A DNA stretch of 64,000 bases from Mytilus californianus (lineage: Eukaryota): assembly GCF_021869535.1 (NCBI RefSeq), contig NW_026262668.1:97278001-97342000 (forward strand). Reading direction: 5' to 3'. The translations under genes and the position numbers were made by a program. Under the pieces are notes generated by a model. That model was not told where the DNA came from. It saw only the letters and a list, made by a program, of their open reading frames with translations, and did not search any database. Shown here in pieces: positions 11,501 through 64,000 of the stretch. Positions within the stretch are counted from its first letter, which is position 1, and each line of letters opens with the position of its first letter.

Positions 11501-13549
11501 TATAATGAGAAATTGACTCTAAATTTTTCTATATATATATATATATATAAAGTTTGTTTTTTTCATTAAATAGTCAAAAAAAAATTAGCATTCCAAGTCA
11601 TCAGTTTTGTTTTTGTCATTTTCTTTTGTCTTGTTTGCATTTTTATTTGTTGCCATGCCAATGTGCGACTCTTCCTTTATTTTCTTTAACCAGTGAAGCT
11701 ATATTATTTATGTGTTTGTTCTCATCATATATGTGTATTGTATATTTAAGGAAAGCACATAATATAAGTTGTTTTAACGTGTGTCCAATCCTATTGCATT
11801 GCAATAACATATTATTTAACTAAACTTCTTGCATCGTCTATCAGAATATTTTTCCCATTAACTTTCGGCAGCATCAAATGAATATTCTCAAGTTTAGTGA
11901 TGACATTCTGATTTTGGGATTTCCATACAACGTCTGCATATATTCAAGAATAGGTCGAACAAATGATATGTAAAATTTTCAAGACTAAACCTATCAAGAA
12001 CATATTTTCATTTTCCTCATTTATTTATGTTTATTCTTTTGTAAGATTGAAAAAAAAGTTCAATATGGTCATTCCACGTTGTTGGAGAAATAGACACCTA
12101 GATGTTTGCTTACTGGCCATATGTAGCTTTTGTGTATTCATTTTTTAGTGATGGGTTTATTTGTTTTGTGTTACACCACTTGTCCGAAGCTAGGAGAGTT
12201 GAGTGCTCACAAACATGTTTAACCCTGCCACATAATTTATGTGCCTTAACCAAGTCAAGAGCCTGTAAAAGTATGTGGTTCTCGTTGGTTGCTTTCTGTC
12301 AAATTTATTTTTCGTTGATTGTTTGTTAGCATACATCAGATAATTGATTTTCTCTTTTGACATAATCACATTTTGTCTTGCCGCGGCCTCTTATATCGAA
12401 CTATTGAGTATGAGTTTTTCTCATGGTTGACTGCCGTACGGTGACCCATTGATCTGTATACATTCATCATATAGTCTTCTTTCTTTCTTTTTGATTCATT
12501 AAAGAGAATTGTTCCTTACCAAAATAAAAGTAATTTCGTTAAACGCTGCTTAAAACTGTCCCACCTGTTTGTCCAACTAAAAAAATACTTGAGACAATGC
12601 ACAATTCGTGCAATGAAATTTTTTTCTATTATCCGTTTATATTCCTCAGGAAAGTTCCAACGTTGATTTTATAGGTTAATCCGTACTTTTTCAACATCAT
12701 ATCCAGTCGAAAATGAATTCGGCAATCTGAAATAAATATTTAAAAAAAAATAGATGAATAAAAACGAGTTAACAAGGGACATCCCTGGGAACCTACATCG
12801 TGTATACACAATTATCATCATTAAATTCCCCTTGCATTATTAATACACACGCGGAAATCAAATTTTGTCTCATTATAGAACATATTATTTGACAGGCCTC
12901 TAAACTGCATTGTACAAGGTAAGCAATAAATATATAATTATCCTGTCCAACAACACCTATATTATAGATATGTAAATGTAAATTGTCGGACAAGGGTAAT
13001 TATTGAACAATTATTATAAGGCAATCAAACTCGTTTGACAAAATCATGACCTTAGTCATCGTCATAAATACATGTCAATATTGAAAACCCAACAGTTTAG
13101 GTGATTCCTTGTATTTTCCAGTAAACGTTTTGTTCATAAGTATTCTTTTATAAAAATAATTTTCACGATAAAAGATACACACCCAGAACAAAAAAAATCC
13201 TTCTTATAGGTTTTGAAATAAATTGAAATTGGTGTTTTGTTCTGATATCTAATTGAAAAAAAAACAGGATCAGAATTTCTTTAAATGAGATTCTTTTGTT
13301 ATATCTTGGCACGAATGTCACAAGTGATTTATATATATATTAAAAAAATTCTTCAAGATACTTTTTACCTAGGCTAAAATTCCAATTATAGGCATGGATT
13401 TCCCAGCATTCCACCGAACTAACAGAATACAATTGTTGACTTTTTTTAAATGCCGAGATCGACCTTTATAACTGTCAAATTTCTTATAAAGATCAGTAAT
13501 ATAATTATAATAAAATACACGCCTTCGTTGTAAAGCTTAACTCGAGCGT

Positions 13550-13680
13550 TTTGATTGGTTGTTGACAGTGGTCGTAGTGAATGACGTTAAGTGATTATTG
13601 GTTAATAATTATCAATAGACAATTATAATCATCGTTTCGAATGTATAAAATACAGTCTCTACAATGTATTCATTACACTT
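13550..13680 (+). promoter_or_regulatory. Pol II core promoter of the orphan secreted gene
   Basis: Inverted CCAAT (ATTGG) at 13554 and 13597, CRE-like TGACGTTA at 13582, TATAAAA at 13644, and Inr-like TCATTAC about 28 nt downstream. ATG at 13717. Confidence 0.6.
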
Positions 13681-13716
13681 CAGACTGGCAGTCCTGACGA
13701 AAAGGCTACTTTTACA

Positions 13717-14184
13717 ATGATGTTCCGTGAAATTATAATTTCTGTACTTGTTGGAAGCATATGTGCCCAGTTCTGGGACAGAGATTCAGACAATTATGGC
13801 GATTCATTTGTCGGAAAATACAGGGATTACAGAGACTCAGATTCAAATGGCTTGTATGACGATAACAGCAATAATAACGACGACGATTCAGATGAATCGT
13901 ACAGAAACAGATTCCTTGTAGGAGGCTTTAGAAGACGCCAAAGTTGGGGACAAAGAGCAGTTGGTTTCCAACCACGCCGACAACAAACTTTTTCACGATT
14001 CAACACTGCCAGAAGAAGATCTCAAAATCAAAATTTTAGAAACTCAAGGAGATCTTCTCGAATCCAATCCCAACGCCGTGTTCAAAACCGTCCCAGATTC
14101 AACGTTCAACAAAGAACATTAAGAAATTCTGCTAGAAACCGTTTTCAAACAAACAGAAACTTCTTCAGAGGTAAGAACATTTGA
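13717..14184 (+). CDS. Orphan secreted protein: signal peptide, Asp/Asn-rich acidic block, Arg/Gln/Asn/Phe-rich cationic block
   Basis: 155-codon ORF with a hydrophobic leader (IIISVLVGSICA|Q), strongly biased composition and an upstream TATA/CCAAT promoter. AG|gtaag at 14170/14171 suggests the exon ends there and the true C-terminus may lie in another exon. Confidence 0.8.
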   Translation: MMFREIIISVLVGSICAQFWDRDSDNYGDSFVGKYRDYRDSDSNGLYDDNSNNNDDDSDESYRNRFLVGGFRRRQSWGQRAVGFQPRRQQTFSRFNTARRRSQNQNFRNSRRSSRIQSQRRVQNRPRFNVQQRTLRNSARNRFQTNRNFFRGKNI

Positions 14185-14212
14185 TTATACATGAAGCTAT
14201 ACCAATTATTGT

Positions 14213-14672
14213 GGTAAACGGACAGAAAGTCACAAATTTGATAGAACAAAACTGAGTCACAATTGATTTGTTCGTAATTGTTTGAATGTATAAGAGGAAG
14301 TTCTTGAAACAGTCTTTTTATTACATATATTCATTTAATTTACAGTTTAGGAAATTGTTCATCAGCCTTGATAAATGAAGATTTGTCAATTGTTTATCAT
14401 GCAAAGGATTTATTTTTGGCACCATGAAGCCATTTAAGTACCAAGCCACTTTGACAAATTGTTTTCTTATCAATAAATTTTAATTATTTGATAATTATTG
14501 ATTTATAAAAAAAACTTTTTGTTTACAAATTTGCTTTATGTATAATAGTTCAAGAAAAGGCAAAAATGTTTGTAAAAATAAGTGTTTTTTTATTCGAAAA
14601 AAAATAATCTCAAAACTGAATTGTGACTTTTTGTCCGTGACTTTTTGTCCTGTGACTTTCTGTCCTACATTC
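14213..14672. mobile_element. Mutator-type MITE just downstream of the orphan secreted ORF
   Basis: TIR core GGACAGAAAGTCACA with subterminal repeats and a 9-bp flanking duplication (CAATTATTG, 14203 and 14672). Confidence 0.72.
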
Positions 14673-16483
14673 AATTATTGCATGTACCGGTAAACGGGCA
14701 GATCGAGTTAAAGGAGGTAGTAAATGGCGAAGTTCAGTATATATATAGATTTAAACTGTCCCTTAATAGTTGATTTTTTTATCCCACACAAAATGATAAG
14801 GATGGCACATGACGTTCTAAACCGAATTGATCTGATTTGTCATGATTTGTAAGCTTACAACGCAGGTTATTTTGATAGCTTAAAATATCTGGTCGGACTT
14901 TGTTCATTCTATATACCAGTCGAGTTGAAAGAATGCCACGCACTCAACAGTAAAAGAACCCTTGCAATAACTCTTTTGGGCGTTTTTTTATGTGATCTAC
15001 TGCATGTAGGAAGAAATCTTGCCCTTTTTCCAATTTCTAAATCGACCTAATACATTGACCGAACGTATAATAAATTCATAATATTAGATATATCGTCCTG
15101 GATTTGCATGACATATTTCCCATTGAATATTCGAGTTATCCAACATTGAATCATGGCTAAAAAGATACAAAGTGAATTCGCGAAACTCAATATAATTGAA
15201 AACATTCATCGGTCACTATAAATTCAACAGTATCTAACGAAACTTTTATATCATGAGATATTGCATCCATCTATTTTTAAGGCAACAGTCCTACCCAGGC
15301 AGCAATGTTGTATAACGCATTCAACATGGACCTCTTTTAACAGAAGTTGAAGATAGGCTGAAGATAAAATCTGGATGACAACAGATGCTAAAAAGAGGAC
15401 ATATATGAACTGACACAGCTATATATATAATGTTACTGTTTCAAACAAAAACTAAAAGATTGTGAGAATCTTATGACTTATATTATAAATTACAGTGGAC
15501 ACTGTATAGTCCCATAGGAAAGGGAAAGATACGATGTTTTGTATTTATTTAGTTGCATATAATGTAGCTCTTGTTATGCTGTGATATTAAATGAACTATT
15601 ATTATGCTGTGATATTAAATGAACTAATAGCCTTTAAAACAATTATTTGTATGGCATACACGATGAGAACGAGAGTTCTTTCCAACGATTCAGTTTTTGT
15701 AGAATATAAAGATAGACCACACCATGTGATACATGATCATGTTGATGCACCACGAGATGTGAAAATAAATGATAACACTAAGTGGACACACAAACTAATG
15801 CTTAAAGCAAATAGAATTTTTCCTAGATAATATGTATTGTCATCTTGAAGATAAAATATAGTTATGTGATGTACCCGATGGGGATAAACTGTGCCCCTCT
15901 TATAAAAGATTTATTCTTTAACTGTTCTGAATCACACTTCACCTGTACAGCTAAACATTTTACGAAGAGTGAAGTTACAACACTCAATCGATGTTTTTCA
16001 ATGATACCTTCTTAATATACAAATCGATTTATCCACCTCAACTCACTCTTACGAATTCTAACGTATCAATGACCGATGCTCATTTTTATACCCTGATAGT
16101 TAATTTCTCATTTTTTAGATAATATCCATGCTAAAACAAAAACAAAAAAATCACTTACTGACTCCTTCTTATGCAGTGTACTTTTCTCAGTTGTGTACGT
16201 TTTTTCAATTACATCTCGGATTCAATGAATTAATGTAATGTGCTAAAAAAATACAGCACGGTTATAGATATTATAAATTTTTATTTAATTTTATCCTTAG
16301 GATAGAGATTTATTGTGGAAGTATTGAGCCTGTATCGCTCATCTACATGATAATTTGGTTCCTAAAAGATATAATTTAAAATTGTTCAATAAGAACTCAA
16401 TAGTGCCCTTTTCATTTTTCATCTCATCGAAACCACATGCAGAAATCCTCTATAGGAAACTTCCGTATGTTATTCGTTATAAA

Positions 16484-18812
16484 AGTAAGTAAGTAAATTA
16501 TTTATTATAGTGACATGTGTAAATATGTACAGATTTTAAACATACAATATATTATAAATATTAATATTAATACGCCCGGCCCAATGGACCTATAAGTCAC
16601 CTCAAATGAAATTAAATAATTATAAAACAATTTTATCACGTTCTTCAAAATAACAAATTATTCATGAAATTATCTTTTTGTTGACGAATGTTAATTTTAA
16701 GATATTAAGCTATTTGTAAACAGAATTGCATCTTTTGAAATATGCCTGTACGATGTATTTGGCTAGTTTTCGAGTATGACTTATAATTAAAAAAATAAGC
16801 TTTTCATTATTGTCCATAGATATAAAGGAAGTAGTTAATAAAAGTTCACCAAACACATGTTCTCGTATATCAGAATAGAATGTACAGTCTAGTAAAAAAT
16901 GAGTTTCAGTTTCGGTCACGTCTGTAGTACAAAATTTACAGAGTCTTTTTTCTGGCCTTTCACCTATATATCGTCCTGTTTCAATCCTCAGAGGTAATAT
17001 TCCACATCTGAATTGTGCTAAATGCGAGCGTTCGACTTTGGTTAAATTGATTTTTACATACTGTTCTTGATTAAAGGCAGATTTGAAAGTTATATAAGTA
17101 CGAAGTTTTGTATATTATCATTCCATATGTTTGAATAAAGGCGCTGAATGTTCATTTCTACAGTTCTCAAATTAATAGCAGTTTTTGAATCAAAATAATG
17201 TTCTAAATTAAGTTTACAAAGAATGTCTTTCAATTCGCTACACCAGTTGTCGGCACAACGGTTATAGTCTGCATTAAAAGCGAGCTTCGTTATGCGATCA
17301 TCTTCAAACTTGAGTAGTCTGTTCCAATACCTCACCATGTTTGTCCATCTTCGAAACTGGCTTGGGATCCATCCAACATCCCCATGTAGGGCAAGAGTAG
17401 GCGCAAAACGGTGAACACCAAGAAAATATCGTATTGTACGGTTTTGAATATTGTCTATTGTTTGAAATTTTCTGTATCCCCAAACACTTGAGGCATAATC
17501 TAAGATAGGAACTACACACGAGTAATACAGTTTTTCGTAGGCATTAAATCCGAAGTCTTTATTGTTGTGAATTTTGGATATGATCGTCCCTAGTGCTCTC
17601 CCACCGCCTTTCGACAAATTTTCCGCGTTGGTTATGAAATTTCCATTATGACCGAATGCAATCCCTAAATATTTGTAATTTTCGACCTTCTCCAATTTGT
17701 TTTTTCCAACTGTAAATTCAAAATTAGTTTCTTTAGTTCTTGGTTTTCTGAAATGAATACATTTAGATTTATCTGTATTGATTAACACCCTCCAACGTTT
17801 ACACCATTGGTGAAGTGTGTTCAACATACACTGAAGATCCTCAGCCGACTTTGCAACTAACGCTATATCATCCGCATACAATAATAATGATAACTTCGTT
17901 TCAAGTAAGTCTACTCCAAGATTAAGGTCATTAATTTCTTGGACAAGATCGTTTATAAATATGGAGAAGAGTGTCGGCGATAAATTATCTCCTTGTTTCA
18001 CACCAGTTTTACAGCAAAACCACGATGTTAGTTTACCGTTAATACGAACACATGACTCAGAACTTTGGTATATACTTTTTACAGAATTGTACAACTTCCC
18101 ATCAATTTTATTCAGCAAAAGTTTGTATAACATCATATCTCTGTCAATAAAATCAAAACATTTCTTCAGATCGATGAATGCAACAAATACTGATTTATTA
18201 TTTCTAATAACACTATTCAAAGTAAATATATGGTCTTCACATGATCTATTTTTTCTAAACCCATTTTGTTCGTCGGCAAGAATATCATTATTTTCAAGAT
18301 GAATGACGAGCCGTTGATTAATAAAAGAACTATACAATTTGCTAGTGCACGACAAAAGACTTATACCTCTATAGTTCATTGGTACTCGGAGATCTGATGA
18401 CGGGTCTTTCAATATTGGACATATGATGGCTTTTCTCCAGATGGTTGGAATTATACTGGTGTCAAATATTAGTTGGAAGAGTTGTTGCAATGTTTGAATG
18501 ATTATCGGGTACTTTAAAACGCCGTACGGAATTTGGTCTGGTCCACTTGCTGATTTTGGTTTTGCATGCATTACTATATTAGTTATTTCATCAATCTTAA
18601 TATTAGAGTTTAAATCCTCATTCGGCATAAACAACGGATCTTCCATTTCAGATTCCAATAACTGTTTATGAACTTTTGACTGATTATAATGGTCGTTTTC
18701 AAATTCGGTGTTGTTTTTCCCGTTGTAAAGATTTTCAAAATCGATACGCTATTTGTTAAGTACGTCCTTCTCGTTCGTTAAGACTTCACCAGATTCATCA
18801 ACGACTTCCATC
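16484..18812 (-). mobile_element. 5'-truncated LINE (CR1/L2-group-like) with RT and C-terminal CCHC motif
   Basis: 522-aa RT frame (QNGFR, KQGDNLSP, LYADD). A frameshift near 17105 leads to KLRTY...RIETGRY...CKFC...HFLLDC. In-frame TAG at 18749. AATAAA and a (TTAC)n tail at 16484-16506. No endonuclease domain. Confidence 0.92.
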
Positions 18813-23700: not shown

Positions 23701-25016
23701 TTAACTCTAGGAATTGTGCTGTTATCCTCACTCAATGTATACTGTTAAATTCAATAATTATGAACTGTCAATGGATGTTTAGAATTAAATAAAATGACAG
23801 ACATTCCGAATTCTCGAAGTACCCGTTTTATATATATATAAAAAAAGAACCGTAAGTCAACGGCTTTTCGGCCAATTATATGTGAAATAGTTGAACTAAA
23901 ATTTCAATTACATTTCAGTCAGTTTGATGCTCAATTCATTTTGAAAAAGAATATCTATTTTTATTTATATGCATTTTTCATTTACCAATTTGGGTAAAAC
24001 ATCTCATGCCGTTTCAATGTTTCAACTGGGACTAATACACTAAATCAGTAGTCCCAGGTTTCAACAAAGATCGAATAGGAACTCCGGCCTTCAATTAATT
24101 TTACAAACTACACCAAAATACAGAAAACATGATTCAAAATTATTTTATCGATAACATCTGGTATTGGTTTTCACTGAAGTTATCTTTACAGACCAGCGGG
24201 TGTTTAACCCCTAATTGTGCGTCTTATCGCATATGTCAAATTGGCAAGTGACCCCATATGGAGCGAGGACGGGTTATCGTCCTTGTCGATACAAATAATT
24301 GTTTTCAAATTGGGTTATCTCCCTTAAACCGGACAGATTCTTGGCAATGATCTCTAAGTCATAATGAGGCCTACAACACTGAGCAAAAAAATAAGTCTTA
24401 CTGCGATTTAAGGACAACCCCTGGCACCGTTGTAAGTGAAATTATATTTGCAAGGTGTCGATCAGATAACATTTCTGTTATCTACATTTTAACGATAGTC
24501 TAGATAATTACCAATGAAAGTATTTTACCAAACTACAATGGGCAACAAAATCATACTAGTTCTGTCATAATAATGCTTTTTATTGTTTTCAACAGTGAGG
24601 TTATACAATCCAACCTATACTTAAATTTAAGGTTGGTCAAGTCCATTTGACATGTACCTCTTTCAGAACATTCCACATACTAAAAATTGACACACTTAGT
24701 TAGAACATGTGGTTTACTTGGCCTCATTCTTAGCATTCATGTTGATCAGTAATTATGCATACCAAATATAACCACGCAAATAAAATCAAGGTAAGGTGAC
24801 ACAAATTGGCCGATAAGATCATATTATAAGCTACGCAAAAAAGTTCTAAAATGTTGGTTGACCTTGTTGAAAAAGAAATTAACACAAAATTGTCAATATT
24901 ACTGTTAGCCGTAAGAAAATGTCTCGCCTCTCGTGGCTTTCATCGGACATTATCCAAGAAGAGTAGGATGATCTATGACCAAACAGGTCCCTTGCGTTCT
25001 GCAAGGAAATCCCAGT

Positions 25017-25181
25017 TCATTGAATAAAGTGTCCCACGCCTAATAATGGTTTGCAGTAATAACCGGTCTGATTGTTAAATTTCTGAAGTATGTTAAGTTC
25101 TTTTTGGTACATTTGTTTCCACTGAACCTCATCTTCGTGGTCGTATCCAATCAGATGACAGATTCCGTGGGTAACCATAAC
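25017..25181 (-). CDS. YBEY: YBEY exon 3
   Basis: 165 nt, VMVTHGICHLIGYDH...HFIQ*. Confidence 0.94.
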   Translation of the reverse strand, partial: VMVTHGICHLIGYDHEDEVQWKQMYQKELNILQKFNNQTGYYCKPLLGVGHFIQ

Positions 25182-28100
25182 CTGTCAGAAAAAAACAAAT
25201 AATTTGATATCATTTATTTACACAACTTATTATGAACAGTGGTGGATACCGGATTTTCAAAAGGGGAACCGGGGCCCCAAGATTTTCAAAATGGGGGAAC
25301 TGGAGCCCCAAGAAATTCATACAGGGGGCAGTTGCTGCCACAAATTGAGATGAAAAGTTTTAAAACAAAACTATTCGGCGACCCGCACCTGATTAGTCAC
25401 ATGAAATTTCTTATTGCACTATTATTTTAGAGATCAAGTGACTGTATAATTATACACAAAAAATCAGTGACAATTTTAGCAAAAATATTATAACAATAAT
25501 ATGTTATTTTTTTCAAACATCCAAAACATACCCCGCCGCATTCAGTTTGCGCCTGTCCCAAGTCAGGAGCCTCTGGCCTTTGTTAGTCTTGTATGTTTTT
25601 TAATTTTAGTTCATTTATATGTTTTGGAGTTTAGTGGCCTTCAGCTGTTGTCTGCTCTGAGGTCGTGTTTTTGTCTCTGACATATTCCCCATTTCCATTC
25701 TCAATTTTAGTTTCATTTATTCAAATCGTCACGGGTTTTTCATTCAGACTAAAAGTTGAGTTAGAAAATCAAATTTGTTGAAAACCAGAGTATTTGGGAA
25801 ATGTTAACAACTTTTAAAATCGTCTTATATATATATAAAATATAAATCTGGGCCCTGATTCGTCCCATGCATACTTATGGGACAGATGAAACCGTTATTA
25901 TATATCAGACACCTTTGTTAACAATGCTATATTCCTTTGAGCGTGATTGAAAGTAAAAAAAACATCCTTTACAAAAGTACATAATCTAATGACAGATATT
26001 ACGAAAATGACATTAAATCACCCTGAGAGGACGACAATGGTGGTAAAAAACTGGTATATTATAGGTCACATTCAATACCATCACACGTGGGACGAAACAT
26101 TGATTATGCAAAAATGCCTTAAATCGGATTTTTGACGTAAAGATCGAAAACTTATAATTCTATTTTTATATGGTGATCTTAAAGCTAAAGTCTAATGATC
26201 TAACCGGTAAAACCTCTTCTAGTTTCTCTTTCTCTCCTAGATTTTCCTTTATATACGGTATGCCTAGTACGATATCACCGAGAATCCTTTCTTCGGGATC
26301 TTTTATAAATGGAAGAACACCTGGCTTGAATACCTGAAAAATTAAACATATGATCTACTTCAACGCAAGCCTTCTATCAAAACATGTATTTCCACTTTCC
26401 TTGATTATATCTTCGGTAATAGCATACACATTTCAGAATATCAGAGTGAAGAGTAAAATTAATCCCCATAGCCAAGGAGTTACTGTTGCTTGCTTGTATA
26501 ATTTTATATATATATGTCATTTAAAAAAAAAAACTCTGTTATTAAGTAATAATCATAACCTAATAACAGTATATGTAATCTGTTTCTAAGCTAAGAAACA
26601 ATAGCTATATAGGATGACTGCTTGAGAGTTCTTACCATTCATGTGTAGACTTTATTCTGAAATAAGGTCAGCAAATGCTCATTACAGAAATATTAATATT
26701 TCAAAAGCAATTTCAAGATGTAACTACATGGACTGAACAAACCACAAACGACCATAACTATCATAATAATTTACACAGACTCGTACATGGAATTTTCACA
26801 ATTCATCTGCTTATCCATCCAGAGCACGTGATCCCCCCTCCCAGTTTTGTAGGGTTCGTGTTGCTCAGTCTTGACTTTTCTATGTTGTTTTGTAGACTGT
26901 TGGTTTTTTTCCCCCCGTTTTTCGTTTGTTTTTGTCATGGCATTTTCCAGTTTGTCTTCGACTAGTGAGTACAAATATTCCATTGGTATCGTTCTCCTTT
27001 ACCTTTACTTTGGACTAATTGAGTTGATTTTTTAGTGTCGAGGAACTCTAGACTTTTCTAGATCTCTACTTTGTGTAACTTGTATCTCTGTGTTGCTGGC
27101 TTATTGACGTGTAACCGTCAACTATATCTTTTATGTTTCTCTCTATCAGAAATAAATGGAGTCAGCTAATCCCCTTCTCTGTTATTTGATTATTTGAAGA
27201 AGAAAAAAAATCATTAATGAAGGTCAGGTTAAGGTAGATCGGGTGTCTTTTTCTGAACATCCCATTTGGGCATGTTGCAAAACTACATTTTTGTTTTTAA
27301 AATATTTTACCAAGTATCATTCATTATACAACAAAAATATCTTAAACTTGAAATGTTGGATTAAACTTTCAAAAAACTGAGTGTTGTAGAGTTAAAAAAA
27401 TTCATAAAAAAATCCTTTTAAAATCAAGGGCAGATATTCACATTGAATTTGATAGAACAATTTGTGTATTTTGGATATTTCAAGAAAATAAGTCCCGTGA
27501 CCCCCTTTTTTTATTTGATATTAGAAGTATTAATGAAAAGAAATTATCTCATCGAATTTTAGCAAATTCTATCGTTTAATGTTTCCTCAATAAGCAAAAA
27601 ATAAGTTACTTCTATATAACCAATATAAAATAACCCCGATTTCGTTAATTTCAAGGTATTTCAACAACAACAAAAACAAGATCCGTGACCCCCAGTTTTT
27701 TTTATAGAAATTTGAAAGAACATCGACCCAGAAGTCTTTTACTGAAGTTTAAGATAAATCTATCGTCAGGAACATTAAGACACCCCAGCTACCTTTACAG
27801 CTAAGTAAAGTGATTACTAAATATGATGTTTAAAATGACAAGATATCAGTCCTTAATGATTTGTAGTTTCTTTATGTAAACCTTAACGCAAGACTAAACA
27901 ACTAAAATCATTTCAAGCGTAAAATAAAAGGTCATGCCTCCCTTTACGTATACCTGCGTTACTTGACATGATGTAATAACTGACCAATCTTGTCCTTAAC
28001 GTAACTGGACAATCTTAATCAGAAGCCACTGATGAGTAAAATGAATGTCAAGGTATACTTTTAGTACTGCTACTGCTCCAATTGGTCTACTTTCAGTGTT

Positions 28101-28898
28101 AACCTTCTTCACTGAACCTAATGCACCAACTGAGAAAAAAAAATCATTCCAGACCTTTGATTTGACGTACTGAGTTGCAAAGATCTAACATGCATAAACA
28201 TTATAACGGGCTTAATTTAAAAATAAGCCAAAACCATTAATGCTTAAAATAAAGGTCAATGAACCCTTATCTTAATGAGGACCTTGGTCTTTAAACATGA
28301 CGAATCCACTGACAAATGTCCATTCCTATATCATGGAATTCAAGGTACGTAGATCAGGTTAAAGTGAGGTTTAACTCAAAACTAAGCCAGCAAAGGCTAT
28401 GAGCCATTCATTTGTAAAGTGAAAACCAGTGTAAGCTAATGTGGACCTTCGTCACTAAACACGGTGCACCAAATGACAAAGGATAATTCCTCTATGATTT
28501 TCAGTTTTTTAGATTTGTGACCTTCACGCAAAATTGAACTAAACCGGGACAGACAAACACCACAATAAGCAAACTCTATTAGGCTAAAGGCACCTGAAAT
28601 TTTTATTTACTTTTCCCCAGAATATCATTGAAAAACAAAGCTGCTAACATTTTTTATACAGAAATTTAAAAAAACTCTTAACTCTTACCTCTATAAAAGG
28701 AAAAGCTAAAACATCTGTTGATTCATCCACACCTCTGTAAGTCTTATTCAGTCTATGAATTGATTTCTTGTCATAACAAACAATAGCTAAATCGAAAGAA
28801 GTTATGTCCATCAACCTTCTCAATAACATCACATGGTTTTCCAGTAAACCAATGTTAAAATCAACAACTTTTTGCAAGTTTTTCACAACGAGAGTCAT
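25017..28898 (-). CDS. YBEY: Endoribonuclease YbeY (mitochondrial rRNA maturation factor), 3 coding exons, 167 aa
   Basis: Exons 28898-28689, 26333-26205, 25181-25017, all phase 0 and GT-AG. Motifs LNKTYRGVDESTDVLAFP, LGDIVLG and the metal-binding HGICHLIGYDH. Confidence 0.95.
26205..26333 (-). CDS. YBEY: YBEY exon 2
   Basis: 129 nt, VFKPGVLP...LGDIVLGIPYI...EVLP, acceptor tttttcag, donor CCG|gttaga. Confidence 0.93.
27233..27793. mobile_element. Kolobok-type MITE in YBEY intron 1
   Basis: GGTAGATCGGGTGTC ... GACACCCCAGCTACC, flanked by TTAA and TTTA. Confidence 0.6.
28689..28898 (-). CDS. YBEY: YBEY exon 1
   Basis: 210 nt, MTLVVKNLQ...TDVLAFPFIE, donor GAG|gtaaga. Confidence 0.94.
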
Positions 28899-30957
28899 CG
28901 CACATGATCAAAACGAAAGTGAAAGTTAGCCGCTTATCTCATTGAAAAAATTTAAAAATTACTATCATAAATTACTTTGAAGAAAGTTGTATTATAAGAT
29001 ACAATTAAATTTGCGATAACTAGTATATCGTTAGAATTATCACTAAGGCTAACGAAAAATAAATTACTAATATAATAATCCCGGTAAACAGTCAGCATTC
29101 AGAACATTCAGAACCGGGATCAATCTAACTCTAAACCAAAGATCTATTTTTTTTATATATAAAACGAAATGACTGAAACGAAATACTAATAAGTATTTTC
29201 TTTAGTCCTGAATGACATGATTTTAATCGTGATTAATTGTAAAGGTTTGTAAAGGGATGTAAGCAAACACATTTCCGGTTACATATAATTTGACTGATAT
29301 GTGCCTACATCGGGTCAAATATATCCTCAGTGATTGTTTTTCGTTTTTCAGGGAGGGAGGGGGAGGGGGGATTGGAATTTCTGTTTTTTTGTCAGGTTCC
29401 CACCCTTAAGAAGGAAAATAAGTTCAAGACACCCCTTCCAAAGACATGGACTACCCCCTCCCCCCTTTTCCAACATTTCTCAATTTACTTTTATTCTTTA
29501 TAACAAAAAATACATGCATACGATTTCTATTTCCATTATCATTATCATTATTATTTAAAAAGATATTGCAACAGAAGTTGATCTAGAGCTTCAAGTGGGG
29601 AAGTATTTTTGTGATTTCATGGAACTTTTAGTTTATTTGGATATATATATATGCCGGTTATGGTCACTTTGACATCTACTATACCTTCATTAAATTTCAG
29701 CACATTGTTCCTCTCCTTTATCGAATTGCTTGCCTCAACGGAAGAATATCTTGAAACTTAGGATTGAATCTTAACATATTGGGCCGAACCGAGCGAGACA
29801 AAAACAAAGTATGTCTGTAGTGCCAAAAAAGATTTTTTTTTTCTATTGTAGACGAAAGCGTAGGGTGTGGTCGCCTAAGTTCGCACCTCTAGGTCATACA
29901 GGAAATTATTCACGTAAAGACATGTAAAAAATGCCACACTCGACTCCCAAATATTCAGTATCTTAAACCATTGATATATATACTAAATTATGAGTTTTGC
30001 GATTAATCATAAAAGGAAACATCTATTAGTATTATCAGTGTTTTTATTATTTGGAAAGGGGTATTACCAGAAAAGCTTCTAGAAAACCGGCAAAAGTACG
30101 ACATCAAACCACCAGTCCCCGACATTGTCGTTCTTCATGTCCAACAAACAAACAGCTAAACAAACATTAAAATGAAGTTTGAAACCAAAAATGATGACAC
30201 AAGAGATATAGATACGCCATCTGAATCAAGTGTTTAGACACTTTTGCTGAATAATCAGATACTTATTTAGTGTATTCGTCAAATAAGTTTTTGTATGTTT
30301 GATATATAGAATTTCTCAAATCTCAATGCTCAAACCCTAAACAATAATTATATGACATGTGCTATATGATAAGTAATAATAATAATAATAGTATTTGCCA
30401 TAGGTTTACGTTTTTTTAAAAAGATCACATAGAGTAAAGGGTATGCGTGGTCGAAGCCAAATAAAAACTTGAAGAAAAAAAAAATCCCACTACTAGAAGA
30501 CCCCGATCAAAACCATGATGGCAATTTAAAATAATTCTAGGCAGAATTTGAGAATAAAATTAAATTAACAGATTTAACAAATTATCTCTTATTAATTGAT
30601 GGTAAGTTTCGTGCGTCCGTTGCGCTTTTCTGTATTTACCTTCATCAGGAACGTTCAAATCGAACAATTCAAAAGCCATGCAGAGATGTATAAATACTTG
30701 ACGATCGAGCCTTACCCCTTGAAGAGACATAAAAAATATCTAATAAATGGTAAAATTTGCAAGAGGGAATTGGAACCTTAGTATGTAATAATGTATTAGT
30801 ATATCAACGGAAAGTTTTAGACATGTATGTTATAAGTGAACAGACATTAAAGTTAATGCGAGTTATCCTTGGTTCCACAGTGACGTTGCAACCGTAACAA
30901 CGACACATAGTAGAATGCATGGAGACCTGTGATGATTGTTGGAACAAGTAATCTGGT

Positions 30958-41282: not shown

Positions 41283-44200
41283 CTGTAATTATAAAAAATC
41301 CAAATATATCTGGCTATTCAATCATGACACTTCAGAAAATAAAATAATATTATTTATCATACTTTTACTTATGACAAAGCATTAGTTTATATATAGATAA
41401 TAACACCTTATATGAGAAAGCCAGATTTTGATTGGTTGATAGCCAGTGTATTTTTCGCATATTCTAATATTTTTTCCTCATTTCAAACGAATTTGCCTCA
41501 AATACCATGGTACTTGCCATTTTGGATATTCCTTTTTTACCCTCTCGAGCATTTTCCCGCCAAAATTTTTCGGATATGACGTTACATAAAAAAGCGAGCT
41601 TGCGCGTACTAGTACATGTATAATTCCCGCGGTTCTATGATAATATCCTCTTATCCTCAAAATTATGAATAAACATGTTAATGAATTAGTTTCAATCCGA
41701 GGGATTATATTGGTTGAGGGTTGATACTGTGTGTGATATTGAAAAAGCCATATCATATACACTTTATTATATACATATACCTCACGTAGATGTTTTTTTA
41801 TGTGACATGATGTCATACAGGTAAGGAGGTTTGAAATGACGTCATACAGATTATGGGTTTGATAAAGCCTTTGCAACAGTGACTGTAATCGATGACGTGA
41901 CGTCATACAGATTAAAGGTGTGATAAAGCCTTTGCAACCGTGCTGATATCAATATCATCACGGGTGGCTGATACAGCACGCTTGCCAATGATTGTATTAC
42001 ACATATACAATTTATCTGTATTTACTACTAAGTATATAATAAAATTAATTATCATGATGTAAATATAAGTAATAATAAATAATTCCTGAAATCATTCAGA
42101 ATATCATTCATAAAAAGATTTAAAGAATAATAATATTACCTTAGATTTTCCTGGGATATGCTGTGCTATTTTGTCCCATCTTTGGTCTGTACCTTTGGGA
42201 TGTTGTCTTAATGCCCATTCTAATATCGTTTGTAGATTTTTATTCCATCCATCTGAATCATCAGTCAATTTTGAAGCACTCCCTGACTTAGATAGATTTG
42301 ATGATACATCAGTTCCATTAGGCAATGAGCTAATCTTACCACTAACATTATTTGTGATTTTTTGTTTTGAGCTACTACAATCTGTATGTTCTGAGAATTT
42401 CCCTCCTTGTTCACTATCATTTTTGACTGGCTGAGTATGACCAATCAACAATGTTTTATCAGCAGTCTTTTGTGGTTTATTCTTCCTTCGTCTAACCTGA
42501 CTATCACCTATATCACCTTTACCATTAGCAGTAGGTAATTCTTCATTTTGAGATATCATTTCATCTGTAATTGTTTGAGATTTCTTTGGCTGTTTCATTA
42601 TTCCACCTGAAATATCATAACTTCATACATTGTAAAGCAATCACATTAGTACAGACATTTAAAACACTAAGATACCTGATTTAATATGTTCAAAAGATTT
42701 GATGCAAATACAACAGTGTACCAATAAATTTCTGAATTTTCAGTATCTTAAGATTTGACAATAATTTTAAAATAGATCAAGATCGACTGCTTAGCTGTGC
42801 TATATAAAATCTCCATTGTTTGTAAAGATTTCAATTGGACAAATGTCCAGCCCTGATTTGATGCTAATGCTATAAATAAGTTCATGATGGTGACATTTTC
42901 TTCTTCTAATTTTCAATACATATGAATATATGTTTAGAAAAAAAGAAATTAGATGCTAACCTTGTAAACTGGCATTTGCTGTAATGTTATAAGATCCTTT
43001 CAATGTTTTGGCCTTTGCTGTCACCTAGAAATATTATAATAATATTATCAATAGAGTTCAAATAATTTTGAAAATAATTATTTTATTTTACAAGTACCTA
43101 CGTCAGATATTCTGAAAATGTTCACATCAAATACACATTTATAAATAGGTTAAATTACTATACACTGTATAAATCTTTAAAAAAATAATTATAGGATTTT
43201 CTTATTCCTCAAAAAGAAATAGTCCACACCCATAAAACCCTAAAAAGGGGCCTCGGTGGCCGAGTGGTCTAAGTAGTTACTACTGTAATCACTAGCCAGT
43301 CAACACTGAGGTTGTGAGTTCGAACCCCGCTCGTGCGGGTGCACTCGACTCCAATCTTAATTGACTAGGATTGTCAGTTTTTCTATCGAAGCTCGGTGGT
43401 TTTCTCCAGGCGCTACGGCTTCCTCCACCAATAAAAACTGGCCGAAATAGCCCAAAAGCTGTGCTCAAAAGTGGCGTTAAAACACAAAAAATCAAATAAA
43501 ACCCTAAAACAATGCAAATTAACATTTACATCAAAGTTGCAGAAAATACATAAAATACTGCCACTGACTGATCAATCAATAAATTATTTAATCAATTATA
43601 CCAAATAGTTTGCAAAATACAAAAATTCATTTACTTAAAATTAAGTCACCTGTACAAATGGAAAAGGTTTAAGAGACTATTTGTAATAAAAGAACAGAGT
43701 TCCAATTTCCCCTGCATTGCATATATTTTATCTGTCCAAGGTACAATGGCAATAATTAAAAAATAAAATGCTCCGCTGGGGCGCAGCTTGATACGACCGC
43801 AGAGGTCGAACCCTGAACAGTTGGGGCAAGTATGGACACAACATTCAAGCTTGATACAGCACTGAATTTGGATTGTAATTAAATATTTGACACAGCATAG
43901 GTTTCTGACACAGAATGAAAGTGGTCTAAGAACTTTAAATTTTTTATTTTACCTATTCAAACCATATCATTATTATTTACTTTTATATATAAATCAGAAA
44001 TAACCAATTTAAAATGGAAAATTTTAAAGAAAAAAAAAGGAAAAAAAAATCCCCCCCAAATTTTTTGAACCCCCTTATGATTCATCACCCCAAACTCAAT
44101 CCCAGCCTTCCCTTTGTGGTATGGTACCTTGCAGTACAATTTCAGAGAGATCCATACACTTGAACACAAGTTATTGTATGGAAACTAGAAAAATGCTTGT

Positions 44201-62534: not shown

Positions 62535-64000
62535 ATTTAAATTCTCCCTCATGAATTCGTCCGAATTTAAAACATTTCTATACTAAATACATGGCTAAAT
62601 AAGAGACAAGTCATAATTTAGGTTTGTTTGCTCGCAGTAACTTTCTTATTTTCTCAGCGAAACAACATTTAATATCTTGTAAACATTTTACAAATTACAA
62701 AAATATACCACAATTCCATCTATATACATTCACAATGTCCTCTAAATACATATCAATACAAACATAACTGTAATATATTATGCAGAGCTTAACGTTAACT
62801 TCGTCTATCAAAGTTACTGGAGCACATCGATAATAATCAAACGTAATCAGGACTTATATATGCCTATAAAACCCCACCCGTACTACCGCCCTCGAAATAT
62901 TCGTGCAGAAAACAACAGTAACATCAGACCACTTCTGATTTACATACTAGCCAAACTTGTACCACAAGTCTAAAGATAGAAATAGAATAGGGAAATTCCA
63001 AATATAACGGAATAGAAATAAATTTAAATTCTCCCTCATGAATTCGTCCGAATTTAAAACATTTCTATACTAAATACATGGCTAAATAAGAGACAAGTCA
63101 TAATTTAGGTTTGTTTGCTCGCAGTAACTTCGATAAAACAAAGGAATAAATAATTTGAGAACTATATGCCAAGATTCAAGGAAACAGCCATTTGAGATTT
63201 TAAATTGTCTTTAATATACCCATCTTTGGCTTTATCAGAAGCCCATCTACCGTGGACTTTAAGTAACCTATCAGAGACTCCTCTATTAGCCCCCGTAGAA
63301 GCGCCACCACTTCTCAAACTATGAAGCCCAAACTTAAGCTTATCTAAACCAATATCTGATAAACTCTCTAACAAAATTTCTCTCGCTCTGGTATAGGACA
63401 ATGGACTATTTATATTACATAATTTATAAACATCTTTCGATTTCATAAAAGACAGTGCTCTGAAAATATAGCTATCAGAATTTTTGCTCAATTCAGCTAA
63501 ATTGATATACTTATTTAACCAAAAAACTGGACATAAATCTGTACCTGTTGCAGCTATAACAACAGAATTACCCCTTCTGTATAAATCAGTTTTGCTTTTA
63601 TCAATGCGAATTTTAACATGACTGACTTGAAACTCAATATAATTCATCTTAATGTTAGCCAATTCACTATACCTCAAAAATCCAGAAAATCCTAACAGAA
63701 ATAATACTACTACACGCAATTTTTTGAGATTATTATGATCTCCGAACTTCAAAACAATTTTCCTTAATATATCTGGCGTAATAGGTTCTTTTTTGTTTAT
63801 AGGTTTACTTAGCAATCTCCTTCCTCCTTCATAAATAAGACCAAGGAATTTGTCTGAACAAGGATTATGTTTGAAATTAAAGTCATGAAACCATTTTATT
63901 GAATAAAAACTTGCATCTAAAATCGCAACACTGGATCCCTGTTGAATGAGTCCACCTATATACATAGAAATCGTAGTAGTTGTCGCTGGTAAACACTCAA
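62535..64000 (-). mobile_element. 3' end of a Ngaro-type tyrosine-recombinase retrotransposon with split direct repeats
   Basis: YR ORF followed by an identical 109-bp direct repeat (63022-63130 and 62535-62643) around a 378-bp spacer, matching the B1-A2-B2 layout. Confidence 0.8.
63162..64000 (-). CDS. Tyrosine recombinase of a DIRS/Ngaro-type retrotransposon (N-terminus outside window)
   Basis: Catalytic residues intact: FLRYSEL (R), KSKTD (K), HSLRSGG (H-x-x-R), HGRW, DGY (Y). The frame stays open to the window edge. Confidence 0.92.
   Translation of the reverse strand, partial: ECLPATTTTISMYIGGLIQQGSSVAILDASFYSIKWFHDFNFKHNPCSDKFLGLIYEGGRRLLSKPINKKEPITPDILRKIVLKFGDHNNLKKLRVVVLFLLGFSGFLRYSELANIKMNYIEFQVSHVKIRIDKSKTDLYRRGNSVVIAATGTDLCPVFWLNKYINLAELSKNSDSYIFRALSFMKSKDVYKLCNINSPLSYTRAREILLESLSDIGLDKLKFGLHSLRSGGASTGANRGVSDRLLKVHGRWASDKAKDGYIKDNLKSQMAVSLNLGI

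What the first reader, a model, noticed from the sequence alone, without database searches (positions are those of the whole stretch)
13717..14184. Orphan secreted di-block polyampholyte: acidic pro-like block plus a 91-residue block with 26 Arg and no acidic residues
Seen: an approximately 17-aa signal peptide ending CA|Q. Then about 44 residues with 14 D/E (DDNSNNNDDDSDES). Then YRNRF...NFFR with 26 R, no D/E/K/C, rich in Q, N, F and S, and with RRR/RR clusters. A compact CCAAT/CRE/TATA/Inr promoter argues it is a real gene. Established: mussels make linear cationic antimicrobial peptides (myticalins) and charge-blocked byssus and shell matrix proteins, and anionic propieces often neutralise cationic peptides. 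Inference: this could be an undescribed Cys-free antimicrobial precursor released at polybasic sites, or a self-coacervating matrix protein. I do not recognise the family.
Basis: partly seen in the sequence, partly recalled or inferred. Interest (0 to 1): 0.78.

Follow-up and report, generated by a model that had tools for sequence, protein, structure and literature searches.

The report
Mussel-only secreted acidic/arginine-rich disordered protein
This is a real-looking, conserved two-exon mussel gene for a small secreted, unstructured protein with an acidic first half and a very arginine-rich second half; it belongs to an unnamed family seen so far only in mussels, and what it does is still unknown.

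Summary
The ORF is at the stated place with the stated composition: a 17-residue signal-like start, a 44-residue block with 13 Asp and 1 Glu, then 90 residues with 26 Arg and no Asp, Glu, Lys or Cys.

Two corrections:
- The last four codons (GKNI) are intron read-through. A conserved G|GTAAGA donor at 14170/14171 joins to a second exon (15282-15340) that adds an 18-residue acidic-aromatic tail, giving 170 aa.
- It is not a lone orphan. Syntenic orthologues exist in Mytilus coruscus, M. trossulus and an M. edulis-complex-like contig. More distant relatives (35-52% identity) lie on mussel-like contigs in three metagenome assemblies, one of which carries two tandem paralogues.

Evidence that the gene is functional:
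- The frame is kept, and all indels are multiples of three.
- Exon dN/dS is about 0.4.
- The promoter block and both splice sites are conserved.

No Pfam family, no paper and no relative outside these taxa was found. AlphaFold gives no fold.

The charge blocks and three Arg-Arg pairs are kept in every relative. My best reading is a processed pre-pro-polycation, most likely host defence. A structural (matrix or coacervate) protein and a peptide-hormone-like precursor remain open. RNA evidence could not be obtained.

The parts
13507..13671 (+). Conserved proximal promoter block. It holds two inverted CCAAT boxes (ATTGG at 13554 and 13597), a TGACGT half-CRE (13582) and TATAAAA (13644).
   Evidence: The four-locus alignment shows long invariant runs. 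Identity for 13531-13671 is 86-91%, against 70-85% further upstream. The distant homologues L004 and L005 also have ATTGG/CCAAT boxes plus a TATA box upstream of their ATG.
13672..13716 (+). Inferred 5' UTR, starting at the Inr-like TCATTAC (13670-13676). The transcription start itself is not shown.
   Evidence: The motif lies 26 nt downstream of the TATA box. Identity to the orthologues is 89-98%. No RNA data were available.
13717..13767 (+). Signal-peptide-like segment, residues 1-17 (MMFREIIISVLVGSICA), with proposed cleavage before Q18.
   Evidence: G13, S14 and A17 are invariant in all 8 family sequences, and the FW that follows is invariant too. AlphaFold predicts a helix over residues 2-22. 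dN/dS is 0.15-0.35.
13768..13899 (+). Acidic block, residues 18-61: 13 D, 1 E, 4 Y, net charge -10. It begins with the family-invariant motif FWDxDSDNYxD.
   Evidence: dN/dS is 0.14-0.25 for the deep Mytilus pairs.
13900..14170 (+). Arg/Gln/Asn/Phe-rich basic block, residues 62-151, plus the first base of split codon 152. It holds 26 R and no D, E, K or C. The invariant RR pairs are at residues 73/74, 87/88 and 100/101.
   Evidence: dN/dS is 0.56-0.87. Charge segregation exceeds nearly all shuffles.
14171..15281 (+). Phase-1 intron of 1111 nt, with donor GTAAGA and acceptor TTTTTAAG.
   Evidence: The donor and acceptor are conserved in all four Mytilus loci. The junction reproduces the annotated orthologue proteins. 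Intron identity is 73-90%, against 88-97% for exon 1.
15282..15340 (+). Exon 2 coding part: the last two bases of Gly152, then NSPTQAAMLYNAFNMDLF and the TAA stop (15338-15340).
   Evidence: It is homologous to the tails of P0001 and P0003. A similar tail (MFYDLDFLEY) follows directly, without an intron, in L004.
15341..15790 (+). Inferred 3' UTR, with ATTAAA at 15586 and 15614 and AATAAA at 15764.
   Evidence: Identity to M. coruscus is 92%. The poly(A) site is not shown.

Best explanation
A single-copy, two-exon mussel gene encodes a 170-residue secreted, intrinsically disordered pre-pro-protein. It belongs to an uncharacterised family known so far only from Mytilus and a few mussel-like metagenome contigs.

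Shown:
- The gene structure.
- Conservation of the frame, splice sites and promoter.
- Purifying selection.
- Absence of any fold or known domain.
- A conserved layout: signal peptide, Asp-rich block (net -7 to -14), Arg-rich block (net +13 to +38), short acidic-aromatic tail.
- Three invariant Arg-Arg pairs.

Inferred mechanism:
- After signal-peptide removal, the acidic block acts as an intramolecular counter-ion (pro-piece). It keeps the polycationic block soluble and harmless in the secretory pathway.
- A proprotein convertase cuts at the first invariant RR (after ...GGF), and perhaps at the next two RR pairs.
- The released Arg/Phe/Gln/Asn-rich polycation then binds polyanionic targets outside the cell. 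Host defence against microbes is the most likely use.

My odds: about 0.85 that it is a real secreted protein gene of a mussel-restricted family, about 0.5 that it is processed at the RR sites, and about 0.3 that the product's role is antimicrobial.
For: Orthologues and synteny:
- Orthologues of 73-91% identity exist in M. coruscus and M. trossulus, plus a Logan contig.
- They are syntenic, with a YbeY gene downstream.

Selection:
- Exon 1 is 88-97% identical where the intron is 73-90%.
- All indels are multiples of three (12 and 18 nt).
- dN/dS is 0.41-0.46 for the deep pairs, and the binomial P for fewer non-synonymous changes than neutral is 0.003-0.01.
- The promoter and splice sites are conserved.

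Relatives and family features:
- A profile search of 1.84 billion representatives returned only family members, and a profile word search added two more.
- All eight sequences keep GS[IV][CS]A then FWDxDSDNY, the charge blocks, and the RR pairs at 73/74, 87/88 and 100/101. Six of the 7 invariant Arg lie in these pairs.
- Non-Mytilus members have GGFG-RR / GGLG-RR at the first site.
- The basic block evolves fast (dN/dS 0.56-0.87) yet keeps its composition. It also expands by a 24-nt unit, 1 to 10 copies. This pattern is typical of effector-like or low-complexity secreted proteins.

Structure and domains:
- AlphaFold gives pLDDT 48.6, with only the N-terminal helix.
- There is no Pfam hit.

Precedent: the combination of an anionic region and an Arg-rich, Cys-free cationic region is documented for mussel myticalins (PMC5577615, PMC12294457).
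Against: - No transcript, peptide or activity evidence was obtained.
- Each orthologue's 90%-identity cluster in the 15-billion-protein collection holds a single sequence, and each homologue retrieved lies on a contig that carries promoter or intron sequence, i.e. genomic DNA. So there is no sign of abundant expression.
- No model of this window's own protein appeared in the searches.
- The cationic block is very polar (Q, N, S) and has no predicted amphipathic helix.
- It is 90 residues long, which is long for a linear antimicrobial peptide.
- Cleavage at all five polybasic sites would strip much of the charge.
- In Mytilus, the Gly before the first RR is replaced by Arg.
Confidence: 0.45

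Rival explanations
1. The protein works intact as a structural low-complexity protein of an extracellular material (shell matrix, byssus or mucus). The Asp-rich block binds calcium or the mineral. The Arg/Phe-rich block supplies electrostatic and cation-pi contacts, so the di-block chain self-associates or coacervates.
For: - Charge segregation is strong and conserved.
- The invariant N-terminal DxDSDNYxD motif and the Asp/Asn-rich run resemble acidic biomineral proteins. This resemblance is from my own knowledge and was not tested.
- The tandem 24-nt unit expands from 1 to 10 copies and varies between contigs, 7 versus 10 units. That is typical of repetitive low-complexity matrix proteins.
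- The protein is fully disordered.
Against: - Matrix and byssal proteins are usually very highly expressed in mantle or foot, so they are readily assembled and annotated. Here only two genome annotations carry the gene, and no retrieved contig looks like a transcript.
- The composition lacks the Gly, Tyr, Lys or His bias of known byssal proteins.
- Net charge is about +15, not balanced.
- The best-conserved residues of the basic block are RR pairs, which fits cleavage sites better than a bulk material.
Confidence: 0.2
2. The gene encodes a prohormone-like multi-peptide precursor. The acidic block is a spacer, and the products are short peptides cut out between the invariant RR sites. Examples are the 10-11-residue QQ..SRFN.. 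piece and the W-G-Q..G-F-Q-P piece, both possibly pyro-Glu-capped. They would act as signalling peptides.
For: - The three RR pairs are invariant, with near-constant spacing.
- Gln follows the first two sites in Mytilus.
- There is a Gly-Arg-Arg amidation-type motif at the first site in the non-Mytilus members.
- The RR-containing 8-residue unit is multiplied in one lineage.
- Low representation in protein sets would fit expression in a few cells.
- A TGACGT element sits in the promoter.
Against: - The family is lineage-restricted, whereas bivalve neuropeptides are generally ancient.
- The putative peptides vary even within Mytilus (F/S, N/S, A/G), and dN/dS of the block is 0.56-0.87.
- The Gly is lost in Mytilus.
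- 14 further single Arg and the long C-terminal Arg-rich stretch have no role in this model.
Confidence: 0.15
3. The ORF is not a functional protein gene in this species. It would be an unexpressed or decaying locus whose open frame survives by recent common descent.
For: - No RNA evidence was obtained.
- The window's own protein is not on record as a called gene.
- dN/dS against the closest species is about 1.3, but on only 12 differences.
Against: - The frame is open in seven further loci down to 35% identity, although 5.4% of single-base changes in the basic block would create a stop.
- Deep-pair dN/dS is about 0.4, with P = 0.003-0.01.
- The promoter, the donor and the acceptor are all intact and conserved.
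Confidence: 0.07

Closest known systems
Myticalins (linear cationic antimicrobial peptides of Mytilus; PMC5577615, PMC12294457)
   Same: - Restricted to mytilid mussels.
- Signal peptide.
- Cys-free cationic region with about 27-29% Arg.
- A low-complexity anionic region.
- Dibasic sites.
- A phase-1 intron after the cationic region, with the last exon encoding the C-terminal remainder.
- Fast evolution.
   Different: - The block order is reversed. Here the anionic block comes before the cationic one; in myticalins the cationic peptide directly follows the signal peptide and the anionic extension is C-terminal.
- The cationic block is 90 aa against 17-47 aa.
- Only 2 Pro.
- No 5'-UTR-only exon is apparent, because the TATA box lies 70 nt before the ATG.
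- The gene is single-copy in this window and in the flanks of the orthologous loci, whereas myticalins form a large, variable gene family.
- No myticalin was retrieved by the family profile.
Prepropeptides with an N-terminal anionic pro-piece that neutralises a cationic peptide (alpha-defensin type; from my own knowledge)
   Same: The order is the same: signal, anionic pro-piece, cationic product. There are basic sites at the boundary.
   Different: There are no cysteines, no fold and no sequence similarity. The cationic part is far longer and more polar.
Molluscidins (dibasic-repeat-rich unstructured antimicrobial peptides from oyster and abalone gill; cited in PMC5577615)
   Same: Short, probably unstructured molluscan polycations with repeated dibasic residues.
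   Different: I could not compare sequences here. No similarity was detected by the profile search. The present protein has a signal peptide and an acidic block.
Asp-rich and repetitive low-complexity shell matrix proteins (Aspein/Asprich type; from my own knowledge)
   Same: Signal peptide followed by an Asp/Asn/Ser-rich low-complexity run. Lineage-restricted. Variable tandem-repeat number.
   Different: It is strongly net-cationic overall. There is no evidence of mantle expression or of presence in shell. There is no sequence similarity.
Protamines and protamine-like sperm proteins (from my own knowledge)
   Same: About 29% Arg, with RRSSR-type Ser/Arg runs and no fold.
   Different: It has a conserved signal peptide and an acidic block, so it is extracellular rather than nuclear. 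It is rich in Gln, Asn and Phe.

Membership tests
Myticalins | Tripartite precursor in the order signal peptide, cationic mature peptide, dibasic site, anionic C-terminal extension (PMC12294457, PMC5577615). | tested here: not met
   Here the order is signal, anionic block (residues 18-61), cationic block (62-151), 18-residue tail.
Myticalins | Three exons. Exon 1 is 5' UTR only, and a phase-1 intron lies just after the dibasic site. | tested here: inconclusive
   A phase-1 intron does follow the cationic block (14171-15281). But a conserved TATA box 70 nt upstream of the ATG argues against a separate 5'-UTR exon. No RNA was available to decide.
Myticalins | [quoted passage not shown] | tested here: not met
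   The family profile found only its own members among 1.84 billion representatives at E <= 0.001. No direct pairwise comparison with a myticalin sequence was made.
Myticalins | Gill-specific expression and antibacterial activity of the mature peptide. | not testable with these tools
Any Pfam family | A match to a curated profile. | tested here: not met
   No family at E <= 10 for the window ORF. None at E <= 0.01 for P0003, P0005 and P0006.
Neuropeptide / prohormone precursors | Signal peptide, conserved dibasic sites flanking conserved peptides, and amidation glycines. | tested here: inconclusive
   Three RR pairs are invariant. A Gly precedes the first pair only in the non-Mytilus members. 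The peptides between the sites vary within Mytilus.
New mytilid family defined here (window gene, P0001-P0007) | GS[IV][CS]A followed by (Q)FWDxDSDNYxD, an Asp-rich block, [YK]xNR[FL]..GG[FL][GR]RR, QPRR(R)QQ..SRFN, RRS, and ...F[FQ]..[NG][FV]FGG at the end of exon 1. | tested here: met
   Alignment A4. E-values are 2.6e-20 to 1e-96 in the profile searches.

The most novel reading that the evidence does not exclude
This would be the founding member of a previously undescribed, mytilid-restricted class of self-neutralised secreted polyarginine proteins. A conserved Asp/Tyr-rich N-terminal block would hold a 90- to 170-residue Arg/Phe/Gln-rich disordered block in check until a convertase cuts at an invariant RR. 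The released polycation would act as a new kind of long, Cys-free host-defence effector, or as a triggerable coacervating glue.
Probability: 0.25. Interest if true: 0.7.

Novelty: new variant of a known kind. Interest (0 to 1): 0.42.

Why it matters

- A second mussel-restricted, Cys-free, Arg-rich secreted family with the opposite block order would broaden the picture of how bivalves build and tame polycationic effectors.
- It would also be a compact natural test case for charge-patterned disordered proteins: pro-piece neutralisation, Arg-aromatic phase separation, and repeat-number evolution.

If it turns out to be a low-level, unexpressed or purely structural low-complexity protein, it is one more taxonomically restricted gene of unknown function, of which bivalve genomes hold many.

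Tried and rejected
- Exact look-up of the window's 155-aa ORF found no called gene on record.
- The joined (spliced) 170-aa model was not sent to any search tool. The exons were handled separately, by reference.
- Pfam gave nothing.
- A scan of JGI metagenome contigs found no relative.
- Literature searches for sequence motifs, accession numbers and the LOC number found nothing relevant. The single hit was a chance string in an unrelated paper.
- No tandem repeat lies within the window's coding sequence, and there is no paralogue in the window.
- A second exon was looked for in L005, L006 and L007 but not found. The contigs may be too short or the tail too diverged.
- No fold search was run, because the model is too poor (pLDDT 48.6).
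- Rejected readings:
  - Myticalin membership, because the block order is wrong.
  - Protamine, because there is a conserved signal peptide.
  - A repeat or transposon-derived ORF, because the locus is unique and syntenic.
- The source organisms of the three ENA metagenome samples could not be identified.

Full report
**What is there**

Window 13717-14184 (+) is an open frame of 155 codons.
- It begins with a hydrophobic, signal-like segment, MMFREIIISVLVGSICA.
- Next come 44 residues with 13 Asp and 1 Glu (net -10).
- Next come 90 residues (YRNRF...NFFR) with 26 Arg, 13 Gln, 12 Asn and 10 Phe, and no Asp, Glu, Lys or Cys.

The window has 32% G+C, and 100 shuffles of it never gave an ATG-ORF this long.

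- ATTGG at 13554 and 13597
- TGACGT at 13582
- TATAAAA at 13644
- TCATTAC at 13670

**Correction of the gene model**

The ORF's last codons (Gly-Lys-Asn-Ile-stop) read into an intron.
- The sequence at 14170/14171 is G|GTAAGA.
- The annotated orthologous proteins continue after ...NFFGG with about 18 further residues.
- The matching exon lies at 15282-15340, behind the acceptor TTTTTAAG. It encodes the rest of Gly152, then NSPTQAAMLYNAFNMDLF and TAA.
- The intron (14171-15281) is phase 1.
- The coding sequence is 454 + 59 nt, which gives 170 residues.

I analysed the two exons separately by reference and did not submit the joined protein to any search.

**Relatives**

The word-based search found three proteins:
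- an unnamed M. coruscus product (P0001, 91% identity)
- M. trossulus LOC134704921 (P0003, 73-78%)
- a gene call on a Logan contig (P0002, 81%)

The loci are syntenic with the window, and both annotated genomes have a YbeY gene downstream on the opposite strand.

A profile of these sequences was scored against 1.84 billion representative proteins. It returned only P0003 and two further proteins (P0004, P0005; E = 2.6e-20). A profile word search added P0006 and P0007.

These four come from ENA metagenome assemblies whose host I could not identify. They look like contaminating mussel DNA.
- L006 carries two paralogues about 9 kb apart. One has a 24-nt unit (PQRRVQSQ) repeated 10.2 times.
- L005 has 7 units of the same repeat.
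- L004 has no intron, and its tail (MFYDLDFLEY) follows directly.

Nothing outside this group matched:
- no Pfam family
- no JGI metagenome contig
- no paper

So the gene is not a lone orphan. It belongs to a small, unnamed family that seems restricted to mussels. Notes by other agents of this scan call the genome the California mussel. That fits the 97% exon identity to M. coruscus, but I did not verify it.

**Is it a functional gene?**

Identity to the orthologues is higher in exon 1 than in the surrounding sequence:

| Region | Identity to orthologues |
|---|---|
| Exon 1 | 88-97% |
| Intron | 73-90% |
| Distal upstream region | 70-85% |
| Proximal promoter (13531-13671) | 86-91% |

- The promoter keeps long invariant runs that include both ATTGG boxes.
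- The donor and acceptor are conserved in all four Mytilus loci.
- The only length differences in exon 1 are 12 and 18 nt.
- Nei-Gojobori dN/dS is 0.41-0.46 for the deep pairs. The binomial P for so few non-synonymous changes is 0.003-0.01.
- Constraint is uneven: 0.14-0.35 in the signal and acidic parts, and 0.56-0.87 in the basic block.
- The frame is open in seven further loci at 35-52% identity, although 5.4% of single-base changes in the basic block would make a stop.

What is missing is RNA. Each orthologue's 90%-identity cluster holds only one sequence. Every retrieved contig carries promoter or intron sequence and so is genomic. Expression is therefore inferred, and probably not abundant in commonly sequenced tissues.

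**Anatomy that is conserved**

Across eight sequences (alignment A4) the invariant positions are:
- G13, S14 and A17 of the signal end
- F19, W20, D23, S24, D25, N26, Y27 and D29 right after it, so the mature N-terminus is (Q)FWDxDSDNYxD
- Y62, N64 and G70 at the start of the basic block
- three Arg-Arg pairs (73/74, 87/88, 100/101), followed by Q or S
- R94 in an SRF(N) motif
- F143, Q144 and F150 near the exon end

Six of the seven invariant Arg lie in the RR pairs, although only 12 of the 26 Arg are in clusters (Fisher P = 0.026).

Every member keeps an acidic block (net -7 to -14) followed by a basic block (net +13 to +38) with at most one acidic residue in its exon-1 part. Charge segregation exceeds almost all shuffles in each of the four members tested.

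AlphaFold with the family alignment gives mean pLDDT 48.6 and only the N-terminal helix. The mature protein is predicted to be disordered.

**How it most likely works**

The conserved features are a signal peptide, a strongly conserved mature N-terminus, a charge-reversed pair of blocks and invariant RR pairs. They fit a secreted pre-pro-protein best.

I propose the following. Every step after signal-peptide targeting is inferred.
- The acidic block neutralises part of the Arg-rich block inside the secretory pathway.
- A proprotein convertase cuts at the first invariant RR after ...GGF. In the non-Mytilus members this site reads GGFG-RR.
- The released Arg/Phe/Gln/Asn-rich polycation acts outside the cell by binding polyanions.

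Several observations point to host defence:
- fast evolution of the basic block with kept composition
- repeat expansion
- lineage restriction
- the precedent of the Arg-rich, Cys-free myticalins

The case is weak, however.
- The block is long, polar and non-amphipathic.
- Cutting at all five polybasic sites would leave several short fragments with only one Arg each.

**Rival readings**

- Intact di-block material protein (shell, byssus or mucus). In favour are the Asp-rich, calcium-motif-like N-terminus, the repeats and the Arg-aromatic content. Against it are the apparent rarity of transcripts and the conservation of RR pairs.
- Peptide-hormone-like precursor. In favour are the invariant dibasic sites, Gln after the sites and GRR in some members. 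Against it are the lineage restriction and the variation of the putative peptides within Mytilus.
- Non-functional locus. Against it is all the conservation evidence above.

**Comparison with known families**

It is not a myticalin.
- Myticalins are defined by the order signal, cationic peptide, dibasic site, anionic C-terminal extension, and by a 5'-UTR-only first exon (PMC5577615, PMC12294457).
- Here the anionic block comes first, and a conserved TATA box lies 70 nt before the ATG.
- Both share a phase-1 intron after the cationic region. That is a resemblance, not evidence of kinship.
- The family profile found no myticalin.

It works most like prepropeptides with an N-terminal anionic pro-piece. 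That is an analogy only.

**Verdict**

- The gene is very probably real.
- The family is uncharacterised and appears confined to mussels.
- Its function is open.
- Interest is moderate. It is a good candidate for a new Cys-free cationic secreted family, but without expression or activity data it remains one of many taxonomically restricted bivalve genes.

Noticed in passing
window 16482-18809 (RT ORF 17090-18658, - strand): A 2.3-kb stretch that is absent from the syntenic M. coruscus locus, where L003 position 8684 is contiguous. It carries a 522-aa reverse-transcriptase ORF (Pfam RVT_1, E = 8.6e-39). It looks like a lineage-specific LINE insertion just downstream of the gene.
   Followed up: partly
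window 63162-63965 (- strand): A 267-aa ORF with a tyrosine-recombinase (Phage_integrase) domain (E = 2e-7). It is probably part of a Crypton/DIRS-type mobile element.
   Followed up: partly
window about 24300-29200 (- strand): This region is syntenic with the YbeY-domain gene annotated downstream of the orthologues in M. trossulus and M. coruscus (77-93% DNA identity in blocks). YbeY is the conserved neighbour of this gene.
   Followed up: partly
L004:248-688: The most distant homologue (P0005) has no intron. The acidic-aromatic tail follows FFGGK directly, and AATAAA lies about 30 nt after the stop. The same contig still has ATTGG boxes and a TATA box upstream. This implies intron loss in that lineage or intron gain in the Mytilus line.
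   Followed up: partly
L006:953-1645 and L006:10001-10771; L005:1073-1762: Two tandem paralogues lie on one 177-kb metagenome contig. The second has a 24-nt unit (PQRRVQSQ) repeated 10.2 times, whereas the near-identical gene on L005 has 7 units. Repeat number therefore varies between samples.
   Followed up: partly
window 13664-13666: An upstream ATG, out of frame with the gene, is present only in this window's sequence. The three Mytilus orthologous loci read CAATC there. It lies between the TATA box and the Inr-like motif, so it is probably not transcribed.
   Followed up: no
window 13717-14170 versus L003: Against M. coruscus, exon 1 has only 2 synonymous and 10 non-synonymous differences (dS 0.022). 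The flanking parts of the intron differ by 6-7%, and the intron as a whole by 10%. The synonymous rate is unusually low, but the counts are small.
   Followed up: no
window 14622-14666 and 15570-15635: There is a 14-nt tandem repeat (3.1 copies) inside the intron. There is also a duplication of about 30 nt in the presumed 3' UTR, which doubles an ATTAAA signal.
   Followed up: no
window 42104-42598 (- strand): A 164-aa ORF ending in a weak Myb/SANT-like match (E = 0.004, below the Pfam cut-off). It may be an exon of a neighbouring gene.
   Followed up: no
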